64,000 nucleotides of DNA from Macrostomum lignano (Eukaryota): the NCBI GenBank assembly GCA_002269645.1, contig NIVC01002002.1, forward strand, positions 150,212-214,211, in the 5' to 3' direction. The notes under the pieces are model-generated. The model saw only the letters and a program-made list of their open reading frames with translations. It had not been told where the DNA came from and did no database searches. Positions 13,408 through 27,912 of this stretch are shown here, piece after piece (within the stretch, counting starts at the first letter, position 1; the number at the start of each line of letters is the position of its first letter). The position numbers and the translations under genes are program-made.

Positions 13408-15497
13408 AGTCATAGCAGGGCAAAAAGCAATGCTTCGTAAGTTATTAAGTTGCTACGCGGCTTAGACGAATAAATGAACATATCTTTCGCACAAAAGACA
13501 CTAGAAATTGGAGCGTATCGGTCTATTTACAATTCTTAGGATTTGCATCTAGAATATGGCAGCAGATTTTTTATCAATAAAAGTACAGATTATACTTGGT
13601 TTACAGATAAGATAAGTGATTTCCTGTCTGGCCATTCTATTTACACAGCTATTTCTGTGAGCTCTGTGCTCAGAAGTAGTATTCTGGAGTAGCTGTGAGG
13701 CTTGCCCCCTAGCCTTGATTGTATTATGTCTTCTCGTCTAAGGCCTCGGAGCCCTCGGGCGTTTTCGGGAAGATCTTTTTTCTTCAGGGTCTCTCCCTGA
13801 GTGCCTGCATTTCCTTGCTTTATAAGTCACACGGTGTCTGCAAACTTTAGTCGCGCGTAGGACGGGGCCGGGAGCCGTCTCCAAGCGTTTCATCATGATG
13901 TTTTGCCCTGCTGACGCTTCTTGCTGTCCCCTCTGTCTCGGTTGCCTCTATTTTGATCGAACGACTTTTTCTTTTTCAACTGTTCTTTTAGAAGTGGCTG
14001 GACTCTTCTAGTCTGCGCCTAAAACACTTTTTCTTTTTTTCTCTGGATTCTAATTACACAGTTTCCTTGCCTACGGAAGCTCGGTATAGTGTTTCATAGG
14101 CTAGCACTAGTGCCATTAATCATATTACCAGCCATACGGTGAGCCTGAGCGGTGTTCTCTTCACTCAAGTCTTTTCCATCATCCACACGGCTCGGGCTTG
14201 ATTACCTATCGAATTCGAGTGTCCGAGTGGCAGCCCCCCCCCCCCTGCTGCCGCCGATATGACGGAAGAGCATTTTTGTTGTGGCGAAATAGGAAAGGCA
14301 GACTGGGGATTTATAAAAGTGCATCGTCTCGCTAGCGCTGGATCCGCTCTCTTCTCTCCCTCTTTGGATTAATACGGGTCTGTGTTATGTCAATCCTCAA
14401 CCCTGGACAGTTGCCTCTGTGCCTCCCAGTCTTGTTAGCTTGCCCAGTTCAAGAGTCCAGCGCGTTAATTGCATCCGTGTACAGTTCTCCCGGCTGACCC
14501 TGCCGCAGAGGCGCGCTATCAGCTGTTAGAATCAGCGGGTCGGCTCGATTGCAGTGCTACGGCCAAAATAGATTGCTTCTGTTGGATAGTATAGCATTAT
14601 TTTCGATATATCTGTTTATTACTATATCAGAGCTTTAGCCTTGACGTCTGCAGATTATTGCCCGCGAAACTGCTTGCCTAGTATTCGTAAGCGGCATTTT
14701 TCTTCCGAAACCAAGGTGTTCATAAAAATTAGATTCATTATAATAAGTACTGCAGATATTGACTAAATACTTGACCAGATGAAAACGGTACCAAGGCCAA
14801 GAAGCGTCCCAGTGAGTCTCTTGCGTCGGCCCAGAGTCGTTTCAGAGTCGTTGCAGGTAACACAGATGAAATAGGAAAGAAGTGACTATAGAGACTACTC
14901 TTAAAAGATGAAATGTCACGGTACAAGTCGCCAAGAAGTCGTCTAAGAGTCAATTTGAGGCGTTTTATTGTCTGCGACTCTGAAACGACTTTAGGGCGAC
15001 GCAGGTGACTTTGGGACCGTAGAGTCCTATCTGAGACGTGCCAGAGTCGCTATAGAATCACTGAGTTGCGTCTAAAGTGCATCTGCGTCAACTATTTAGT
15101 CTACTTGAGTTAGTAGAAAGTTAAGCGTTAACACAACTGAATTTTAAACAACTTTTTCGCGAATCTTACGATTTTGCAACTCGCGTGATGCTCTCCTGAC
15201 TCGTCAGTCGCCTCTCCGTCGCATTACAGTCAATTGAGTAATTAAAAATTCACAAGAGTCGCTAGTGAGTTGTTTGTAATCACTCTAGCGATTCTTGTCA
15301 CTGTAACGTCAATGATTATCCATTCCAAGTATCCAGTAATCCAGCCTTGCTGCAGAATTCTTTTCCCTCTCGATTTCAGAGTCTCGCCGTTCTGGAACTG
15401 ACAAAAATAGCTATTAATTAGTCAAGGGCGTCAGCGAGATTGAATGCGGCGCTAAGGCTGGCACCATCGGACAGTTTGCCTGAAGTGAACTGGCGCA

Positions 15498-16226
15498 ATG
15501 GCATCGGCAAAGACTGACGCCGAGGCCGGAGTTAAAGTGGCCAATAATGCGGAGTTTTTCGTTTGCAATGCCAACATAGTTGGGCATAGGAATCGAGTTT
15601 GGGGCCACAGGAACACGGTGACAGGGAATAGCAATCAGGTGTACGGCAATTGGAACCGGGTGGCCGGCACCCGCAACACTGTCCGGGGCATCAACAATCG
15701 GGTTGTCGGTGTCAAAAATGACGTCATCGATGCTAGCACTCTTGGCAGCGCCGGCTCCTCCGCTCCGTCCTCGTCGACATCCTCGGCCGAGGAATCGGCG
15801 TCGAACGATGGCGATTCTGCCGCGGCGGCCGAAGTCCTTGTCAGCGTCTGCAAGCGGGTCCGAGTTCGAACCGACGCCAATGGGCGGCGCCAGCGCGAAA
15901 ATTTTCACGTCGAACTGGTCGAGCGCCGACTATTTGGGGTGGATTTGTCCTCGTCTTGGACGGCCAGCTCGCCGTTGAAAGGATTCAACAATCCAGACAC
16001 TCTGTACGATTTGTCCGGTCTGGATGGCGCGGACTCGGACGCCGCCGGCCTGCCCTGCTGCGTCTGCCTCGGCCGGGAGCGCTGCGTCAAGCTGTCCCCC
16101 TGCCGGCACGTGCCGGTGTGTCTGGCCTGCGCCAAGCGCCTGTTTAACGGGGCTCGAACCCGGACTGTCGCTTGTCCGCTGTGCCGCTCGCCTGTTGAAT
16201 CGGTGGAACGACTGTTTTTGAACTGA
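15498..16226 (+). CDS. Intronless 242-aa protein: N-terminal xxNxVxG heptad repeat, Ser/Ala linker, C-terminal C3HC4 RING finger (putative E3 ligase)
   Basis: Open GC-rich ORF. RING ligands are C187, C190, C202, H204, C208, C211, C226 and C229 (IAP/MGRN-type spacing, CPLCR end). G, N and V show strict 7-residue periodicity over residues 29-76. Confidence 0.85.
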   Translation: MASAKTDAEAGVKVANNAEFFVCNANIVGHRNRVWGHRNTVTGNSNQVYGNWNRVAGTRNTVRGINNRVVGVKNDVIDASTLGSAGSSAPSSSTSSAEESASNDGDSAAAAEVLVSVCKRVRVRTDANGRRQRENFHVELVERRLFGVDLSSSWTASSPLKGFNNPDTLYDLSGLDGADSDAAGLPCCVCLGRERCVKLSPCRHVPVCLACAKRLFNGARTRTVACPLCRSPVESVERLFLN

Positions 16227-16324
16227 TTGAATGCGAGTTTAGTCTAAATATGTGGGAGAGATATCTGAGCATTTACCAGCTGCTCAACTCGTATGGAAGC
16301 TGATCTTATCTTAGCCAGTAGACG

Positions 16325-16590
16325 CTTAGCTCACCAGGAGGCTACTGTACTGCTTAGCTCACCCGGATGCTACTGTACTGATTAGCTCACCTGGAGGCTA
16401 CTGTACTGCTTAGCTCACCTGGAGGCTACTGTACTGCTTAGCTCACCTGGAGGCTACTGTACTGCTTAGCTCACCTGGAGGCTACTGTACTGCTTAGCTC
16501 ACCTGGAGGCTACTGTACTGCTTAGCTCACCTGGAGGCTACTGTACTGATTAGCTCACCTGGAAGCTACTGTACTACTTAGCTCATCTGT
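16325..16590. repeat. 28-bp minisatellite (~9-10 copies)
   Basis: Unit ttagctcacctggaggctactgtactgc. Confidence 0.93.
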
Positions 16591-17424: not shown

Positions 17425-18095
17425 CAGTCTCCCAGATCCTCAGTTGTTGGGCCACCTTCCCAGATCCTCAGTTGCTGGGCCACCACCCTCCCAGATCCTC
17501 AGCTGCTGGGCCACCACCCTCCCAGATCCTCAGTTGCTGGGCCACCACCCTCCCAGATGCTCAGTTTTTGGGCCACCCTCCCAGATGCTCAGTTGCTAGG
17601 CCACCACCCTCCCAGATGCTCAGTTGCTAGGCCACCACCCTCCCAGATCCTCAGTTGCTGGGCCACCACCCTCCCAGATGCTCAGTTGCTAGGCCACCAC
17701 CCTCCCAGATCCTCAGTTGCTGGGCCACCACCCTCCCAGATCCTCAGTTGCTAGGCCACCAGCCTCCCAGATGCTCAGTTGCTGGGCCACCACCCTCCCA
17801 GATGCTCAGTTGCTAGGCCACCACCCTCCCAGATCCTCAGTTGCTGGGCCACCACCCTCCCAGATGCTCAGTTGCTAGGCCACCACCCTCCCAGATCCTC
17901 AGTTGCTGGGCCACCACCCTCCCAAATGCTCAGTTTTTTGGGCCACCCTCCCAGATCCTCAGTTACTAGGCCACCACCCTCCCAGATGCTCAGTTGCTGG
18001 GCCACCACCCTCCCAAATGCTCAGTTTTTTGGGCCACCCTCCCAGATCCTCAGTTACTAGGCCACCACCCTCCCAGATGCTCAGTTGCTGGGCCA
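17425..18095. repeat. 31-bp minisatellite (~21 copies)
   Basis: Unit cagatcctcagttgctgggccaccaccctcc. Confidence 0.93.
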
Positions 18096-18564
18096 CCCCA
18101 TATCAGATTCTAATTTCCCAGTTACTCATATTTTTCCTGGCAAATAGACTTGCAGCATTGTGCGCCGCAGACACTTCAGTATTTCCTTCTTTGACAGGAA
18201 CCGTTGACTGAACTTTTAGAGTCCGTTGATTTATACACAAACTGTGACACAGACGTCCCCAAGTCAATACTGTCAATCATATTTTCAATTCGAATTTCTG
18301 CTGCTAAGTTTCGCGCCCGGCTCCATTTCGTCCAAGCTTTATTAAATTTTCGTGTTCAGTCATAACTAGCAATAAATCGAAAGATACTCTATCTCTGTCT
18401 ACTTTTCAAATTGTTGTTTAAAAGATTGCAATTGCCATTTACTACACGTGTTACTATTGGAAAAATCGATTTTTCTTATACTTTTTATTATTGGCATCAT
18501 TCAGCTAGGGCTGGTTTTTATAGCGAATGCAGAAATCTAACTAGTAACTAGTTTGTCACAGTGC

Positions 18565-19425
18565 CACCTGAGTAGCCAGCTTCCCAAATCCTCAGGCTGA
18601 GTAGCTAGCTTCCCAGATCTTCAGGCTGAGTAGCCAGCTTCCCAGATCTTCAGGCTGAGTAGCCAGCTTCCCAGATCTTCAGGCTGAGTAGCCAGCTTCC
18701 CAGATCTTCAGGCTGAGTAGCCAGCTTCCCAGATCTTCAGGCTGAGTAGCCAGCTTCCCAGATCTTCAGGCTGAGTAGCCAGCTTCCCAGATCTTCAGGC
18801 TGAGTAGCCAGCTTCCCAGATCTTCAGGCTGAGTAGCCAGCTTCCCAGATCTTCAGGCTGAGTAGCCAGCTTCCCAGATCTTCAGGCTGAGTAGCCAGCT
18901 TCCCAGATCTTCAGGCTGAGTAGCCAGCTTCCCAGATTCAGGCTGAGTAGCTAGCTTCCCAGATTCAGGCTGAGTAGCTAGCTTCCCAGATCCTCAGGCT
19001 GGGTAGCCACACTCCCAGATCTTCAAGCTGAGTAGCCAGCTTCTCAGATCTTCAGGCTGAGTAGCTAGCTTCCCATATCCTCAGGCTGGGTAGCCAGCTT
19101 CCCATATCCTCAGGCTGAGTAGCCAGCTTCCCATATCCTCAGGCTGAGTAGCTAGTTTCCCAGATCCTCAGGCTGAGTAGCCAGCTTCCCAGATCTTCAG
19201 ACTGGGTAGCCAGCTTCCCATATCCTCAGGCTGAGTAGCTAGCTTCCCAGATCTTCAGGCTGAGCAGCCACACTCCCAGATCCTCAGGCTGTGTAGCCAG
19301 TTTCCCAGCTCCTCAGGCTGAGTAGCCAGCTTCCCAGATCTTCAGGCTGAGTAGCCAGCTTCCCAGATCCTCAGGCTGTGTAGCCAGTTTCCCAGATCCT
19401 CAGGCTGAGTCGCCAGCTTCCCAGA
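18565..19425. repeat. 29-bp minisatellite (~30 copies)
   Basis: Unit gagtagccagcttcccagatcttcaggct. Confidence 0.93.
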
Positions 19426-19500
19426 TTGGTTGCAGCATGCCTCAATATCTAAATGGGCAGTCATTGACCTCGGATCGTATTCTTTCCAGCAACAGACACA

Positions 19501-19836
19501 ATGAACGCGCCCCAGCCCTGGGAGTCATTCCTACTAGAAGAAGGCCAGAAGAAAGTCGTGATGCAGCGCGACACCAAAGTGCCCAACGCGGCCCTGTTCA
19601 TCATCAACAAGGAGGATCACACCCTGGGCAACCTGCTCACCACCCAGCTGCTCAAAGACCCCGGCGTAATTTTCGCCGGCTACAAGATGCCGCATCCGAT
19701 GGAATTCCGCGTCATGATCCGGGTGCAGACTGTGCCAGACTATCTGCCGCAGGACGCCTTCAATCACGCCATCTCGGATTTGATCTCCGAGATCTCCGGC
19801 CTGGAGGAGGGATTCAAGGCTGGCCTGTACTCATGA
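19501..19836 (+). CDS. POLR2J: DNA-directed RNA polymerase II subunit RPB11, intronless, 111 aa
   Basis: The motifs [26 protein letters not shown] and QLLKDP.V.FAGYK.PHP are diagnostic of RPB11. An acceptor-like ttctttccag lies 10 nt upstream of the ATG. Confidence 0.95.
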
Positions 19837-24350: not shown

Positions 24351-27300
24351 CACAGATACTAAATACCATAGATGGTTCACTCGAGTATATTTAGCAAAAC
24401 TACTCTCTGTTCGGTAGTATGATCGTAAAAAGCTATATTTATTTATTCAACTGCATGTAGCTGTGAATAATTAAGCTAAAACATTGATTATTGACGTTGT
24501 CTACACAATCGTAAGTCAAACTTTAATGCTACATTGCTACTGGTATACTCAGTAATTATTTTTATTTATTTAGCAAGCAAGCAACATTTTTGTGCATTGC
24601 AAGTGAGAAAAAAGAACAAAACGGGGTAATATTTATAATACAGTGAAATTAAAATTACCGTAGAATAAAAGGATGCGACTATAAAGTTCTTAAGTTATAC
24701 TAGTGTAACAAAGTTAGTGTAGTTTGCGAATTTTCCCCATAGTTTTCTTTTTTTGGGCCACTGCACGCAGGTTCTTCATTTCACGTCGGCACCAATGGTG
24801 CAGCCGTAGGTGAGCAAAATTTTTAAAAACCTGATTATGCACCCGCGTGTGATGCAGCTCGCAGGCAGGCAGTGCTACTAATTGTTCCCGGAGGTGGTTA
24901 ACAAACCGAGCTGCCACACGAGGCTGGATTATGAAGCTGGATGTCAGGGCTGCGAACTCGGCTTCCATCTTCATAAATGCAACAAGCGCCACCGGCGAGG
25001 GCGCAGTCAACCCGCGGAATGCATGCGAGTAGGTCTTGTGCTGGATGTGAACCCCTGCAGATTCGGATGCTGTAAGCAAAGAGTTGCACACCTGACAGTG
25101 AAGAACTCGGCTTCGCTTTAGCACATATCCGCCAACGTACTCAGCAGCTTCCAGCGAGACATTGCTTGCGCCCTGCCAGGAGTCCAGTTTTTTTGGAGCA
25201 GCTGCTGCTGTGGTGCCTGGCATACAACACTGCTTGAGTTCTGTGGACCCGCTTTGGTAGTCACACAGTCTCCGGCACCGGTGGGGGCGCAGGCTGCTAT
25301 GATGGCAGCCTCACAGTTGTCGTCTTCGCAGTTGCGAGACGTCGAGTCAGGCTGGGCCAGGCCGCTGGTAGCCACGGACCGCAGGGCACCGACGAAGGAG
25401 CTGAGCTCTGGTCTGTCGTTAAAACCGTTGTGCCCGCGGATGATGCAGAAAAGGTTCTGAAGAGGAGAATTGTACGATGCCCTTTGTTTCATCAATGCAA
25501 ATTCTTGTACATTGCTGAACCACAAATTAGGGTGAAGTAATCTTTAAATATTTAATTATGGAAATATAGTCTCGCTTTTAATAAATTTTGTGAACTTACC
25601 TCAACGTGATCTTGAGTAAATCGGCGAGTACACACGTAGTCAAAGTGGTGGTCCCGAATGAGAGTAGTGCACAGCTGCTTGGTAGCAGAAAGCGATAGGA
25701 GCCACCCTTCTTTGAATGGCATCGTAGGCTTAACAGCGCGCCCATTCAGTGGGAGAAAGCGCCAGCTCCGCACGAAGTCTTCCGCCTCTGTCAGACGGTC
25801 GATCTGCGCCGATAGAGTATCGCGATGAATCGGCTGCTGGAAGCCTTTGCCATAGAGATGCGCTGAGTTCAGCATGTCGAAAATGTCATTCAGACGCTTC
25901 GCAAATTCAGCTGTCTGCAACGCATCCTCAGATAACTCATTATGATGGACCAAAGTCCTGATACCACTTGCAACAGAATGGCTTAACACTTGTGCTGCGA
26001 GCGATACTTTCATCTTCTGACCCAGAGCTAAGCTGAAATGAGCGTCGGTGAGCTTGCTTGCTAATCGGAGAGATGGGCCGCTGTCGTTCTGATAAAACTG
26101 GATGAGATGCTGCCACTTAGCTAGCTTGCACTCGTTGAATTTGATGTCGTTCTTCATCAGGGCGTTTCTAGCATTTTTTAGGCAATGTGGGATGTCCACG
26201 ATGACGTAGACTGGCTCACCGGTTACAGGGTGACGTAAAAAAGGATTTGCAGTGTCAGCCCGTCTGGAAAGGTGAGCCCACTGGGTTGACTCTTGATCCG
26301 CAACCAGTGCAACGACCTTAATCCCGGCCTTGTGGCTAGCTGTCAGGCACTCATCAATAGCTATCCCGAATCCTTCTTGGCCAAGAGTTCGAAAAACAGG
26401 ATAATATGCGATTGGTTGTTTCCAGTCCTGAAAGACTCCTCGAAGCACAGCGACGATGGCCTCGTTTACAGGTCTGGGCAACTGCTCCTTGCTGTCATCA
26501 GCGGTTCGTGGATCGCAGCCCACCACCACGTCACGATGTTGCTGGTAGCGCAGGCTGGGTGTGAGACTCATTCCATCGAAGCAAAGGGTAGCAATCCGCT
26601 GCTGATTTGTCGATGATGCATCAAACTTGGACTGCAAGGATCGTATCGTCAAGTTGCAAATCCCAGGCAATACGAAATACTGTCGAATTCGCCGCCTAAT
26701 TGTCGAACTTGATGGTAGCGGAATTTTCCACTTATTGCGGACCAGTCGGTAAGCTGACGAGCCTTTGTGATGCAGCTGAATTGAGCACGCAATGTCTTTT
26801 TTGGTCCAGCGCATGCCGCGACTGCGAACATCACGCCTGATCTTCTGCTGCATCAGACGAGTAGCTATTGAGCTGCTGCTACCCGACTGGACTGCTTTTG
26901 CTTTTTCTATTCGCGCTTGCATCTGTCGGATGGTGGTTTTTTGGCGGCGAACTTTGCTGCGCAGCTGAGCGATGATGTTGTTCAGCATGACCTTGGTTGG
27001 TTGGGCTGTTGGCTGTTGGCATTGTCTGCTGCTCTTCGGCCTGTGGCGGCTCACCATCGGTGCTGTTGAATGGCTGCAGTTCAGGTGGATAGAGATTGTC
27101 AGCCTCTTCGTCACTGCGAAAAACCAAATGTGTCAGGTCATGTGCAATGAGGCGGGGTAGAGTCAGCTCCCTGTCTGGAACGGCATTCCATCGCAAACGT
27201 GTGGTATATTCATGTCGCAGAGAAGGACAGCTGTAATCATTGTCAGTAAAATGCACACTGCACACTCGCAATCCCATCTTGAGAATGGCTCCGATGTCCA

Positions 27301-27912
27301 AGTCGATTTCCAGCATTTGCCTCCATCGATTCGCAACTCCGTCGTCCGCTGGAAACCTGTGCATTCGCACAGCCACTCCCTCGTCCGTTAGAGATTGCGC
27401 TGTATGGGTGCAGGTGGCTGCACAGCAGCGCTTTGAGCTGAATTCCATGTCAGTGTGGTGATTGCAAGAAGCGTTGCTGGTGTTTTTGTCGTTCTTGCAC
27501 TGCTTGCTGGTAAAGTGCGAAGTAAAATCTTCTCTTTCTCCGTCCTGCCTTATTACTTTAAACTCCGTATCTCGTCCCACTTGACTGCTAGCTAGAAACG
27601 AAGTCAATCGATTTCTTCGACTGTCTATGGCCAAGACCAACGCCTTTTTGGGGTGGGTGCAGATTTTACTAGTGGTTTTTACGCCTGAGAATTCCGATCC
27701 ACTGCCAAGCTTGGCCATAGATAAAAGAATTGAAAGCGCCAAGGTTGTGCGCGTGTGACGCGGGCATCTAGACCATCATTCTCTCCAAATATTTTATGTC
27801 AAGACAAAAAATAGAGCAAATATGCGCTTATGCCACTGGACAGAGAGTAGCAAATCAAACTGACGCATAAAGATAATGCTGAGTGAACCATCTAGGGTAT
27901 TTATTATCTGTG
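24351..27912 (-). mobile_element. Full-length P-element superfamily DNA transposon (3562 bp)
   Basis: 32-bp TIRs CACAGATACTAAATACCATAGATGGTTCACTC and CACAGATAATAAATACCCTAGATGGTTCACTC (30/32 identical). Perfect 8-bp TSD CTGCTGAC at 24343-24350 and 27913-27920. Encloses a THAP transposase. Confidence 0.95.
24714..27448 (-). CDS. THAP9/P-element-type transposase (THAP zinc finger, coiled-coil linker, DDE core, C-terminal domain); one clear intron and two unresolved frame switches
   Basis: THAP motifs CCAATC..HRFP..W..RVCSVHF..RLRWNAVP. Catalytic motifs CFDGMSL, VADQES, DIPHCLKN, KMKVSLAAQVLS and TQDHVE|NLF. Intron 25599-25457 (GTAAGT..TCAG). Frame changes near 27000-27100 and 25180-25320. Confidence 0.88.

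What the first reader, a model, noticed from the sequence alone, without database searches (positions are those of the whole stretch)
15567..16226. xxNxVxG beta-roll-like heptad repeat fused to a RING E3 ligase domain in an intronless animal gene
Seen: seven consecutive heptads (HRNRVWG, HRNTVTG, NSNQVYG, NWNRVAG, TRNTVRG, INNRVVG, VKNDV), a flexible linker and a complete C3HC4 RING. Established: xxNxVxG is the consensus of the grass ice-binding protein (LpIBP/IRIP) beta-roll, and related N-x-x-x-G repeats form beta-solenoids in microbial adhesins. I know of no animal family joining it to a RING. The outward positions are R/W/Y/Q rather than a flat Thr/Ser face and there is no signal peptide, so ice binding is doubtful. 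Inference: a cytosolic beta-solenoid substrate or ligand sensor coupled to ubiquitination, possibly of viral or horizontal origin given the intronless structure.
Basis: partly seen in the sequence, partly recalled or inferred. Interest (0 to 1): 0.8.

Follow-up and report, generated by a model that had tools for sequence, protein, structure and literature searches.

The report
Flatworm beta-roll RING ubiquitin ligase
This flatworm gene joins a short beta-roll of seven-residue repeats to a ubiquitin-ligase RING finger; it belongs to a large, unstudied protein family otherwise seen only on environmental DNA contigs that look like giant viruses, so it was probably acquired by horizontal transfer and is not an antifreeze protein.

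Summary
Window 15498-16226 (+) is one uninterrupted 242-aa ORF of Macrostomum lignano, with a 99%-identical second copy in a syntenic contig.

- **Structure:** residues 11-78 form a confidently predicted beta-solenoid (pLDDT 88-97) of ten strands spaced 7 residues apart. Residues 187-229 are a complete C3HC4 RING with an IAP/MDM2-style 13-residue tail (F240).
- **Family:** an exhaustive search of 1.84 billion representatives shows the architecture is not unique. At least 80 clusters (50% identity) have N-terminal xxNxVxG heptads plus the same C-terminal RING.
- **Distribution:** of the 21 non-self representatives whose sources I looked up, only one carries an organism name, and it is a 54%-identical M. 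lignano paralogue. The rest are unnamed metagenome or SRA proteins.
- **Context:** ten contigs with family members are compact and intronless. They carry giant-virus-like genes: delta-like PolB, a weak NCLDV capsid hit, DHFR-TS, dUTPase, MYND/DUF4116, a histone-fold protein, PCNA, SNF2 helicase.
- **The flatworm gene:** it sits between ordinary host genes, uses host-like codons, and comes from a transcript-derived annotation.

Best reading: a domesticated, horizontally acquired, probably dimeric RING E3 that uses the beta-roll as its target-binding or assembly module. The resemblance to grass ice-binding protein is a shared repeat motif, not a shared function. Function and transfer direction remain inferred.

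The parts
15498..16226 (+). Complete single-exon CDS (242 aa plus stop) of the beta-roll-RING protein; a near-identical copy of GenBank PAA59048.1 / BOX15_Mlig034525g2
   Evidence: ORF list. Exact cluster look-up names Macrostomum lignano. The second copy is 240/242 identical and lies in 98-99% identical syntenic flanks.
15528..15731 (+). Residues 11-78: beta-solenoid of ten 7-residue units, the last seven of clean xxNxVxG type. Inferred to be a two-sided beta-roll with 14 residues per coil.
   Evidence: AF2 pLDDT 88-97 with a strand every 7 residues. Pfam LbR_Ice_bind E 1.7e-5. The family profile hits 3ULT at 3.9e-16 and BpaC at 1.6e-12. Lag-2 periodicity of heptads across the family.
15732..15833 (+). 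Residues 79-112: Ser/Ala/acidic low-complexity linker
   Evidence: pLDDT 41-44, no secondary structure.
15834..15926 (+). Residues 113-143: basic beta-hairpin (VSVCKRVRVRTDANGRRQRENFHVELVERR), specific to the Macrostomum copies
   Evidence: Strands 113-125 and 131-143, block pLDDT 56-71. Among 176 family and hit proteins, phmmer finds it only in P0001, P0003 and the paralogue P0005.
15927..16055 (+). Residues 144-186: disordered acidic pre-RING linker containing the near-invariant family proline (P159)
   Evidence: pLDDT 38-54. P159 is at least 90% conserved in alignments A1 and A3.
16056..16223 (+). Residues 187-242: C3HC4 RING (C187...C229) plus a 13-residue C-terminal tail ending LFLN (F240)
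   Evidence: Pfam zf-C3HC4_3 at 40.4 bits, above the cut-off of 27. The best solved relative is the MDM2 RING, E 3.7e-5, aligned through CPLCRSPVESV. pLDDT 78-94. Tail length and aromatic position are conserved in the family.
15361..15379 (+). Polypyrimidine tract plus AG (ttttccctctcgatttcag), about 120 nt upstream of the ATG; a possible cis- or SL-trans-splice acceptor of the 5' UTR
   Evidence: Read directly from the sequence. The 'g2' gene suffix denotes the second gene cut out of one transcriptional unit, per PMC5730564. This is an inference and was not tested.

Best explanation
The ORF is a transcribed Macrostomum lignano gene for a cytosolic or nuclear RING-type ubiquitin ligase.

**Proposed mechanism.** The C-terminal RING is of the IAP/MDM2 kind. 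It ends 13 residues after the last zinc ligand and has an aromatic residue (F240) at tail position 11. It most likely dimerises and activates an E2~ubiquitin conjugate. The N-terminal 70-residue beta-roll has Asn ladders and a Val/Ile core inside, Gly at the turns, and variable residues on two flat faces. It serves as the target-recognition or self-assembly module. A disordered linker connects the two and carries a Macrostomum-specific basic hairpin.

**Origin.** The gene is one member of a large, uncharacterised 'beta-roll + C-terminal RING' family. All other members examined lie on compact, intronless, giant-virus-like environmental contigs. The flatworm lineage therefore most likely acquired the gene horizontally, probably from a giant virus. 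It then duplicated it, adapted its codon usage and kept it.

**Status of each step.**
- Shown: the ORF, the domains, the predicted fold, the family and its genomic contexts, and integration in host DNA.
- Inferred: E3 activity, dimerisation, the role of the beta-roll, and the direction and source of transfer.

It is not an ice-binding protein.
For: **Domains.** RING above the Pfam cut-off. MDM2, IAP and TRIM RINGs are the best solved relatives.

**Fold.** Solenoid pLDDT 88-97 in the full model and 91.7 alone.

**Family.**
- 610 representatives at E<=1e-3.
- At least 76 of the best 150 have three or more in-phase heptads plus a RING.
- All 80 aligned members hit PF13920 and 77 of 80 hit PF21300.
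- HMMER alignments span both domains, e.g. P0006 over query residues 13-242 and P0008 over 23-239.
- A conserved pre-RING proline and a conserved C-terminal tail are shared. In 65 of 80 members residue 11 after the last Cys is F or Y, and 73 of 80 tails are 11-14 residues long.

**Coil size.** Heptad identity is 0.21-0.26 at even lags against 0.11-0.13 at odd lags. Asn-state agreement is 0.80-0.84 against 0.42-0.51.

**Variable faces.** Positions 1, 2, 4 and 6 of the heptad have 3.1-3.8 bits of entropy.

**Contexts of family members.** ORFs of at least 90 aa cover 74-91% of nine loci and 63% of the tenth, L008, against 29-31% for flatworm DNA.
- L002: PolB plus PARG.
- L011: DHFR-TS, dUTPase, MYND/DUF4116.
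- L010: 515-aa histone-fold protein.
- L052: weak Capsid_NCLDV hit, E 5e-6.
- L053: SNF2 helicase plus PCNA.
- L013: T5orf172.

**Host integration.** There are two 99% identical copies with syntenic flanks next to PKA-R and RPB11-like genes. GC3 is 0.70, against 0.80 for the neighbouring host gene. A 54% paralogue shares the unique hairpin. The annotation is transcript-based.
Against: - No biochemical data exist for any member.
- None of the environmental contigs carries a taxonomic label. The only capsid hit is below Pfam's cut-off (26.8 against 34.8 bits). PolB relatives are all environmental, apart from one MAG labelled Nitrosomonas.
- In BFVD, which holds named viral proteins, the solenoid matched only two uncharacterised proteins from Marseillevirus metagenome bins. 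No named isolate with the full architecture was recovered.
- I looked up sources for only 21 non-self representatives (20 of the 150 best hits plus the weak RING hit P0002), so named eukaryotic members could exist among the rest.
- The RING alone scores as well against RING-only proteins as against family members. It therefore cannot by itself prove common descent of the whole architecture.
- Foldseek against the PDB gave no significant match, and 3ULT was not in the top 50. The beta-roll geometry thus rests on sequence-profile similarity and the 14-residue periodicity, not on a structural superposition.
- The two copies differ at 3 synonymous and 2 non-synonymous sites, too few to show selection.
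Confidence: 0.6

Rival explanations
1. Vertical or protist origin. The beta-roll-RING family is an old eukaryotic family that giant viruses captured from protist hosts. Macrostomum either inherited it vertically, with loss in most animals, or took it from a eukaryote rather than from a virus.
For: One contig with a family member, L008, is less compact (63% ORF cover) and carries DEP, SET and ankyrin genes; it could be cellular. The flatworm gene has fully host-like codon usage and an old paralogue, so the event is ancient and its source is hard to trace. Giant viruses are known, from general knowledge, to pick up host RING genes.
Against: No named eukaryote other than M. lignano appeared among the 21 non-self representatives looked up, although the collection includes NCBI, UniRef and EukProt. 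Nine of the ten contigs read are compact and ORFan-rich with virus-type genes. The CDS lacks introns in a genome that averages 4.9 introns per gene.
Confidence: 0.2
2. Assembly module. The beta-roll is mainly an oligomerisation device rather than a substrate binder. It would trimerise as in trimeric-autotransporter adhesin heads, or stack end to end, clustering RINGs into a higher-order E3.
For: The family profile matches the TAA head repeats of BpaC (1.6e-12), CbpF (4.6e-8) and UspA1 (1.3e-3). Many members alternate Asn-type and Ala/Ser-type heptads, as YadA-like heads do. One face of the flatworm roll carries a small, flat V28-T42-A56-V70 ladder, read from the sequence using the strand register.
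Against: The closest solved match, LpIBP (3ULT), is to my knowledge a monomer. The hypervariable exposed positions fit diverse targets better than a conserved self-interface.
Confidence: 0.25
3. Ice-binding protein. The repeat binds ice and inhibits recrystallisation, as the grass IRIP/LpIBP beta-roll does.
For: It shares the xxNxVxG consensus. Pfam LbR_Ice_bind matches at E 1.7e-5, 3ULT at E 0.0027 for the protein and at 3.9e-16 for the family profile.
Against: The score is below Pfam's cut-off (25.3 against 30 bits). There is no signal peptide (the N-terminus is MASAKTDAEAG). Exposed ladders carry R33, W35, Q47, Y49, R54, R63 and R68 instead of a flat Thr/Ser/Val face. The domain is fused to an intracellular RING. 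Only about five coils are present. Relatives sit in viral-type genomes with GC from 23 to 58% from diverse samples. From general knowledge, M. lignano is a temperate intertidal species.
Confidence: 0.02
4. Non-functional relic, contaminant or annotation artefact. On this reading the ORF is a decaying insert or foreign DNA in the assembly.
For: It lies next to long satellite arrays and in a window with a transposase. Differences between the two copies are 3 synonymous to 2 non-synonymous, which is not evidence of constraint.
Against: The ORF is intact in both copies, which lie on long contigs (214 kb and 91 kb) with host genes on either side. All zinc ligands and the tail aromatic are intact. 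Codon usage is host-like. The annotation admits only transcripts with RNA-seq support. A diverged paralogue was annotated independently.
Confidence: 0.05

Closest known systems
Lolium perenne ice-binding protein LpIBP / grass IRIP beta-roll (PDB 3ULT; Pfam PF21300 LbR_Ice_bind)
   Same: The same heptad consensus xxNxVxG. It is the best solved sequence match of the repeat (E 0.0027 for the protein, 3.9e-16 for the family profile). A 14-residue coil is inferred.
   Different: The score is below the Pfam cut-off. There is no secretion signal and no flat Thr/Ser ice-binding face. The array is half as long and is fused to a RING. Foldseek did not retrieve 3ULT. From general knowledge, the grass domain is a recent Pooideae innovation, so the likeness is probably convergent use of the same simple repeat.
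YadA-like left-handed parallel beta-roll heads of trimeric autotransporter adhesins (BpaC 7O23, CbpF 9U93, UspA1 3NTN; Pfam YadA_head)
   Same: The family profile hits them at E 1.6e-12 to 1.3e-3. Many family members alternate Asn-type and Ala/Ser-type heptads, as these heads do.
   Different: Those are bacterial, secreted, obligate trimers with stalk and membrane-anchor domains, none of which is present here. Pfam YadA_head does not hit the flatworm protein and hits only 1 of 80 family members.
IAP / MDM2-type C-terminal RING E3 ligases (Pfam PF13920 zf-C3HC4_3)
   Same: The RING is above the cut-off. MDM2, cIAP, XIAP and MGRN1 are the best solved relatives. The RING sits at the extreme C-terminus with a 13-residue tail and an aromatic at tail position 11. 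From general knowledge, this is the layout of MDM2 Y489 and XIAP F495, which support RING dimerisation and E2~Ub activation.
   Different: There is no BIR, p53-binding or other known partner domain. The N-terminal module is a beta-roll.
Unnamed environmental 'LbR + RING' proteins (e.g. P0006, P0008, P0025, P0175) on giant-virus-like contigs
   Same: The same domain order and similar size (median 248 aa). They share the pre-RING proline and the RING tail. Full-length HMMER alignments reach E 5e-16.
   Different: Identity is only 20-33%. They lack the Macrostomum-specific hairpin. They are encoded in compact virus-like genomes rather than in an animal chromosome.

Membership tests
RING E3 ligase, zf-C3HC4_3 (PF13920) subtype | HMM score above the curated cut-off | tested here: met
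   40.4 bits against a cut-off of 27, residues 186-236.
RING E3 ligase, zf-C3HC4_3 (PF13920) subtype | Eight zinc ligands in C3HC4 order with cross-brace spacing | tested here: met
   C187, C190, C202, H204, C208, C211, C226 and C229 read from the sequence. These columns are invariant or nearly so in 80 family members.
RING E3 ligase, zf-C3HC4_3 (PF13920) subtype | Ubiquitin-ligase activity with an E2 | not testable with these tools
   Needs an in vitro ubiquitination assay.
IAP/MDM2-like dimeric RING | C-terminal tail of about 13 residues with an aromatic residue near the end | tested here: met
   The tail is RSPVESVERLFLN, with F at tail position 11. The same position is F or Y in 65 of 80 family members. 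The alignment to MDM2 runs through the tail. Dimerisation itself was not tested.
Grass ice-binding beta-roll (PF21300 LbR_Ice_bind / IRIP) | HMM score above the curated cut-off | tested here: not met
   25.3 bits against a cut-off of 30. Some relatives score far better (best E 6.5e-18).
Grass ice-binding beta-roll (PF21300 LbR_Ice_bind / IRIP) | Secreted (signal peptide), with a flat Thr/Ser/Val ice-binding face | tested here: not met
   The N-terminus MASAKTDAEAGVK has no hydrophobic signal. The exposed ladders are R33/Q47/T61/D75, W35/Y49/R63/I77, N26/T40/R54/R68 and V28/T42/A56/V70, read from the sequence with the strand register.
Grass ice-binding beta-roll (PF21300 LbR_Ice_bind / IRIP) | Ice-recrystallisation inhibition activity | not testable with these tools
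   Needs a splat or capillary assay with recombinant protein.
Grass ice-binding beta-roll (PF21300 LbR_Ice_bind / IRIP) | Two-sided beta-roll with 14-15 residues per coil | tested here: inconclusive
   The 14-residue periodicity across the family supports it, and the AF2 solenoid is confident. However, the Foldseek PDB search gave no significant hit and no 3ULT in the top 50. Model coordinates could not be inspected for coil size or handedness.
Trimeric autotransporter adhesin head (YadA_head) | YadA_head Pfam match, with neck, stalk and a C-terminal membrane anchor | tested here: not met
   No YadA_head hit for the protein and only 1 of 80 in the family. The C-terminus is a RING.
Uncharacterised LbR + C-terminal RING family (environmental, giant-virus-like) | N-terminal array of at least three in-phase xxNx[VI]xG heptads, a disordered linker with a conserved Pro, and a terminal PF13920 RING; alignable end to end | tested here: met
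Uncharacterised LbR + C-terminal RING family (environmental, giant-virus-like) | Encoded in a Nucleocytoviricota genome | tested here: not met
   The flatworm copies lie in host chromosomal DNA. For the environmental members the viral assignment is inferred from gene content only.

The most novel reading that the evidence does not exclude
The beta-roll-RING proteins may be a widespread giant-virus family of ubiquitin ligases whose hypervariable beta-roll faces act as a programmable target-recognition scaffold, a viral counterpart of TRIM- or LRR-type receptors. On this reading Macrostomum captured one from a giant virus, duplicated it and now uses it as its own E3, for example in antiviral restriction or stem-cell and germline proteostasis. 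That would be a rare documented giant-virus-to-bilaterian gene domestication.
Probability: 0.3. Interest if true: 0.65.

Novelty: new variant of a known kind. Interest (0 to 1): 0.5.

Why it matters
RING ligases are defined by what their non-RING part recognises. A left-handed beta-roll as that part has, as far as my literature searches show, not been described or tested.

The family is large: at least 80 clusters at 50% identity among the best 150 hits, and 610 hits in all. It appears concentrated in giant-virus-like genomes, so it may be a common viral tool for rewiring host ubiquitination.

The flatworm copy offers a tractable entry point. M. lignano has RNAi, transgenesis and expression atlases. 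It is also a candidate case of virus-to-animal gene transfer.

The result is also a caution for annotation. Pfam 'LbR_Ice_bind' hits in animals, such as those counted as cold-adaptation genes in a salmon preprint, need not mean ice binding.

Tried and rejected
1. The word-indexed homology search with the protein found only itself and one weak RING hit. With a 32-sequence profile it was swamped by Asn-rich candidates and returned only 21 hits. The exhaustive phmmer search was needed.

2. The search for related loci on IMG/VR failed in four ways:
   - The profile had no conserved 7-10-column stretch.
   - P0161 and P0025 had no close relatives.
   - The L002 PolB returned only two 23%-identity matches.
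   - It is therefore uninformative for taxonomy.

3. A degenerate DNA pattern for two heptads, run against IMG/VR, gave 36 loci. These included five GVMAG contigs, but only beta-roll-only ORFs (e.g. L026, L048) or chance matches, and no RING fusion.

4. Foldseek of the full model against BFVD was dominated by RING and IAP hits. The solenoid-only model hit only two uncharacterised proteins from Marseillevirus metagenome bins and nothing significant in the PDB. Foldseek's masking of highly regular repeats may explain the PDB result, but I could not verify that.

5. The PolB of L002 was used as a taxonomic anchor. Its relatives are all unnamed environmental sequences, plus one MAG labelled Nitrosomonas. 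Identity to eukaryotic Pol delta/zeta is 23-32%. This is consistent with a large DNA virus but is not proof.

6. Each half scores best on single-domain proteins (long beta-roll arrays; RING-only proteins). The halves alone therefore do not discriminate origin.

7. Considered and rejected: the ice-binding reading, IAP membership (no BIR domain) and TAA membership (no anchor).
Full report
**1. What is in the sequence.**

Window 15498-16226 (+) is a single ORF of 242 codons (sequence). The finding's coordinates start at residue 24, where the repeats begin.

Residues 30-78 read HRNRVWG HRNTVTG NSNQVYG NWNRVAG TRNTVRG INNRVVG VKNDVID, exactly as reported. Three more degenerate heptads precede them.

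Tandem Repeats Finder sees no 21-bp DNA array there. The periodicity is therefore maintained at protein level and is not a recent DNA expansion.

The C-terminus has all eight ligands of a C3HC4 RING: C187, C190, C202, H204, C208, C211, C226, C229.

| Search | Match | Result |
|---|---|---|
| Pfam | zf-C3HC4_3 | 40.4 bits, cut-off 27 |
| Pfam | LbR_Ice_bind, residues 17-76 | E 1.7e-5, 25.3 bits, cut-off 30 |
| PDB | MDM2 RING | E 3.7e-5 |
| PDB | Grass ice-binding protein 3ULT | E 0.0027 |

**2. Whose gene it is.**

An exact look-up places the protein in a two-member cluster. The other member is PAA59048.1, 'hypothetical protein BOX15_Mlig034525g2 [Macrostomum lignano]'.

- That copy differs at 2 of 242 residues. 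At DNA level there are 3 synonymous and 2 non-synonymous differences.
- It lies on another contig whose flanks are 98-99% identical to the window over more than 9 kb. This is expected for the partly duplicated M. lignano DV1 genome (PMC5730564).
- The neighbours are ordinary host genes: a PKA regulatory subunit upstream and an RPB11-like RNA polymerase subunit downstream (the latter at window 19495-19836).
- The gene call spans exactly the ORF, so the CDS has no intron. M. lignano genes average 4.9 introns.
- GC3 of the ORF is 0.70, close to the neighbouring host gene at 0.80. The window as a whole is 47% GC.
- The GenBank annotation was built only from RNA-seq-derived transcripts; novel transcripts below RPKM 0.5 were discarded. 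The gene is therefore very probably transcribed.
- A pyrimidine tract plus AG at 15361-15379 could be the acceptor of a UTR intron or of the spliced leader. This is an inference.

**3. Predicted structure.**

With a 32-sequence alignment, AlphaFold2 gives four regions:

| Residues | Feature | Confidence |
|---|---|---|
| 10-80 | Ten short strands, one per heptad | pLDDT 88-97 |
| 81-112 and 144-180 | Disordered | Low |
| 113-143 | Hairpin | Moderate (56-71) |
| about 186-240 | RING | 78-94 |

The solenoid alone gives mean pLDDT 91.7 and pTM 0.79.

A profile of the repeat region matches 3ULT at E 3.9e-16. It also matches the left-handed beta-roll heads of trimeric autotransporter adhesins: BpaC at 1.6e-12, CbpF at 4.6e-8 and UspA1 at 1.3e-3.

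Across the family, heptads resemble each other at even lags, not odd ones:

| Measure | Lags 2, 4, 6 | Lags 1, 3, 5 |
|---|---|---|
| Identity at variable positions | 0.26, 0.245, 0.21 | 0.13, 0.13, 0.11 |
| Asn / non-Asn state agreement | 0.84, 0.80, 0.80 | 0.51, 0.47, 0.42 |

This is the signature of a 14-residue coil made of two non-equivalent sides, that is, a two-sided beta-roll.

One result does not fit. Foldseek of the solenoid model against the PDB found nothing significant, and 3ULT was not in the top 50. I could not inspect the coordinates, so coil size and handedness remain inferred.

**4. It is not unique: a large family.**

The word-indexed search found nothing. The exhaustive phmmer search of 1.84 billion representatives found 610 proteins at E<=1e-3.

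- Several align over both domains, e.g. P0006 over query residues 13-242 and P0008 over 23-239.
- Of the best 150, at least 76 have three or more in-phase heptads N-terminal to a C3HC4 RING.
- In an 80-member alignment, all 80 hit PF13920 and 77 hit PF21300.
- Members share size (median 248 aa), a near-invariant proline in the acidic pre-RING linker and the RING tail.
- The tail after the last Cys is 11-14 residues in 73 of 80. Its 11th residue is F or Y in 65 of 80; in the flatworm protein it is F240.
- From general knowledge, this is the layout of the MDM2, XIAP and cIAP RINGs, where that aromatic supports RING dimerisation and E2~ubiquitin activation.
- Exposed heptad positions 1, 2, 4 and 6 are highly variable (3.1-3.8 bits). 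Positions 3, 5 and 7 are N, V/I and G. The filter used to collect heptads inflates the conservation of positions 3, 5 and 7.

**5. Who else has it.**

I looked up the sources of 21 non-self representatives: 20 of the 150 best hits plus the weak RING hit P0002.

- Only one carries an organism name. It is P0005 (UniRef A0A1I8H3F5, auto-named 'Pectate lyase'), a 54%-identical M. lignano paralogue.
- P0005 shares the hairpin region, which occurs in no other collected protein. That argues for one acquisition followed by duplication.
- All the others come from JGI, ENA or Logan assemblies without names.

Ten contigs carrying members were read:

| Locus | Gene content |
|---|---|
| L002 (106 kb) | Delta-like PolB, second PolB-like gene, PARG, AAA |
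| L003 | DOT1, PP2C |
| L004 (carries P0006, the closest non-flatworm relative) | Two MYND proteins, RNase T, another RING, Kelch |
| L006 | Only ORFs without Pfam matches |
| L010 | 515-aa histone-fold protein, dsRBD |
| L011 | DHFR-TS, dUTPase, MYND+DUF4116, F-box |
| L013 | MYND, T5orf172 |
| L052 | 508-aa protein with weak Capsid_NCLDV hit (E 5e-6, 26.8 bits, cut-off 34.8), Ras |
| L053 | SNF2 helicase, PCNA, Ras |
| L008 | DEP, SET, ankyrin; looser packing |

Long ORFs cover 74-91% of these loci (63% for L008), against 29-31% of the flatworm DNA. Their GC ranges from 23 to 58%.

The L002 PolB has only environmental relatives at 42-55% identity, plus one mis-labelled bacterial MAG. Its identity to eukaryotic Pol delta/zeta is 23-32%.

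Together this is the picture of diverse Nucleocytoviricota genomes. No contig is taxonomically labelled, and the one hallmark capsid hit is sub-threshold. In BFVD, the solenoid matched only two uncharacterised proteins from Marseillevirus metagenome bins.

**6. Interpretation.**

The most economical reading has three parts:

- The gene is a RING E3 in which a beta-roll replaces the usual substrate-binding domain.
- The family arose or radiated in giant viruses, where variable roll surfaces would target different host or viral proteins.
- A copy entered the Macrostomum lineage long enough ago to acquire host codon usage, a lineage-specific hairpin and a diverged paralogue.

Ice binding is very unlikely, for four reasons:

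- The protein is intracellular.
- It has bulky R, W, Y and Q ladders.
- It has only about five coils.
- It scores below the Pfam cut-off.

The likeness to the grass protein is a shared simple repeat.

Two questions remain open. One is whether the roll binds targets or drives oligomerisation, as it does in adhesin heads. The other is whether the donor was a virus or a protist.

**7. Novelty.**

Literature searches for the domain, the architecture and giant-virus RING or beta-roll proteins returned nothing describing it. The only paper using the Pfam name counts 'LbR_Ice_bind' hits in a salmon genome as cold-adaptation genes.

Databases already tag the two Pfam domains on these proteins automatically. 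The architecture is thus computationally visible but uncharacterised. I rate it a new variant of a known kind (RING E3), of moderate interest.

Noticed in passing
window 16324-16589, 17429-18097, 18568-19426: Three satellite-like tandem arrays (28-bp x9.5, 31-bp x22, 29-bp x15 or more) lie directly downstream of the gene, between it and the RPB11-like gene. The 28-bp array is about 25 copies long in the second genomic copy (L001 10827-11540), so copy number differs between the duplicated regions.
   Followed up: partly
window 25552-27742, minus strand: A P-element-like transposase. One ORF has a THAP domain (26879-27742). An overlapping ORF in another frame has the TNP-like RNase H and GTP-binding insertion domains (25552-27114). 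The two are split by a frameshift or an intron.
   Followed up: partly
window 19495-19836, plus strand: A single-exon RPB11-like RNA polymerase subunit gene (Pfam RNA_pol_L in the L001 gene table) with GC3 0.80. It was used here as the host codon-usage reference. It may belong to the same transcriptional unit as the RING gene, given that gene's 'g2' suffix.
   Followed up: partly
L002 1-1200 and 16800-20594: The 106-kb environmental contig carries two family-B DNA polymerase genes. One is a 1264-aa delta-like enzyme. The other is a 651-aa protein with a faint protein-primed PolB (DNA_pol_B_2) signal, which might come from an integrated polinton or virophage-like element.
   Followed up: no
L026 2984-3595 and L048 2745-3434 (IMG/VR viral contigs): Small proteins with the same heptad beta-roll but no RING occur on predicted viral contigs. 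The roll therefore also circulates as a stand-alone module or with other partners.
   Followed up: no
literature (bioRxiv 10.1101/2025.09.09.675276): A salmon genome preprint interprets about 19 Pfam LbR_Ice_bind hits as an expansion of ice-binding proteins. The present case shows that this Pfam model also picks up non-ice-binding heptad beta-rolls, so that inference deserves checking.
   Followed up: no
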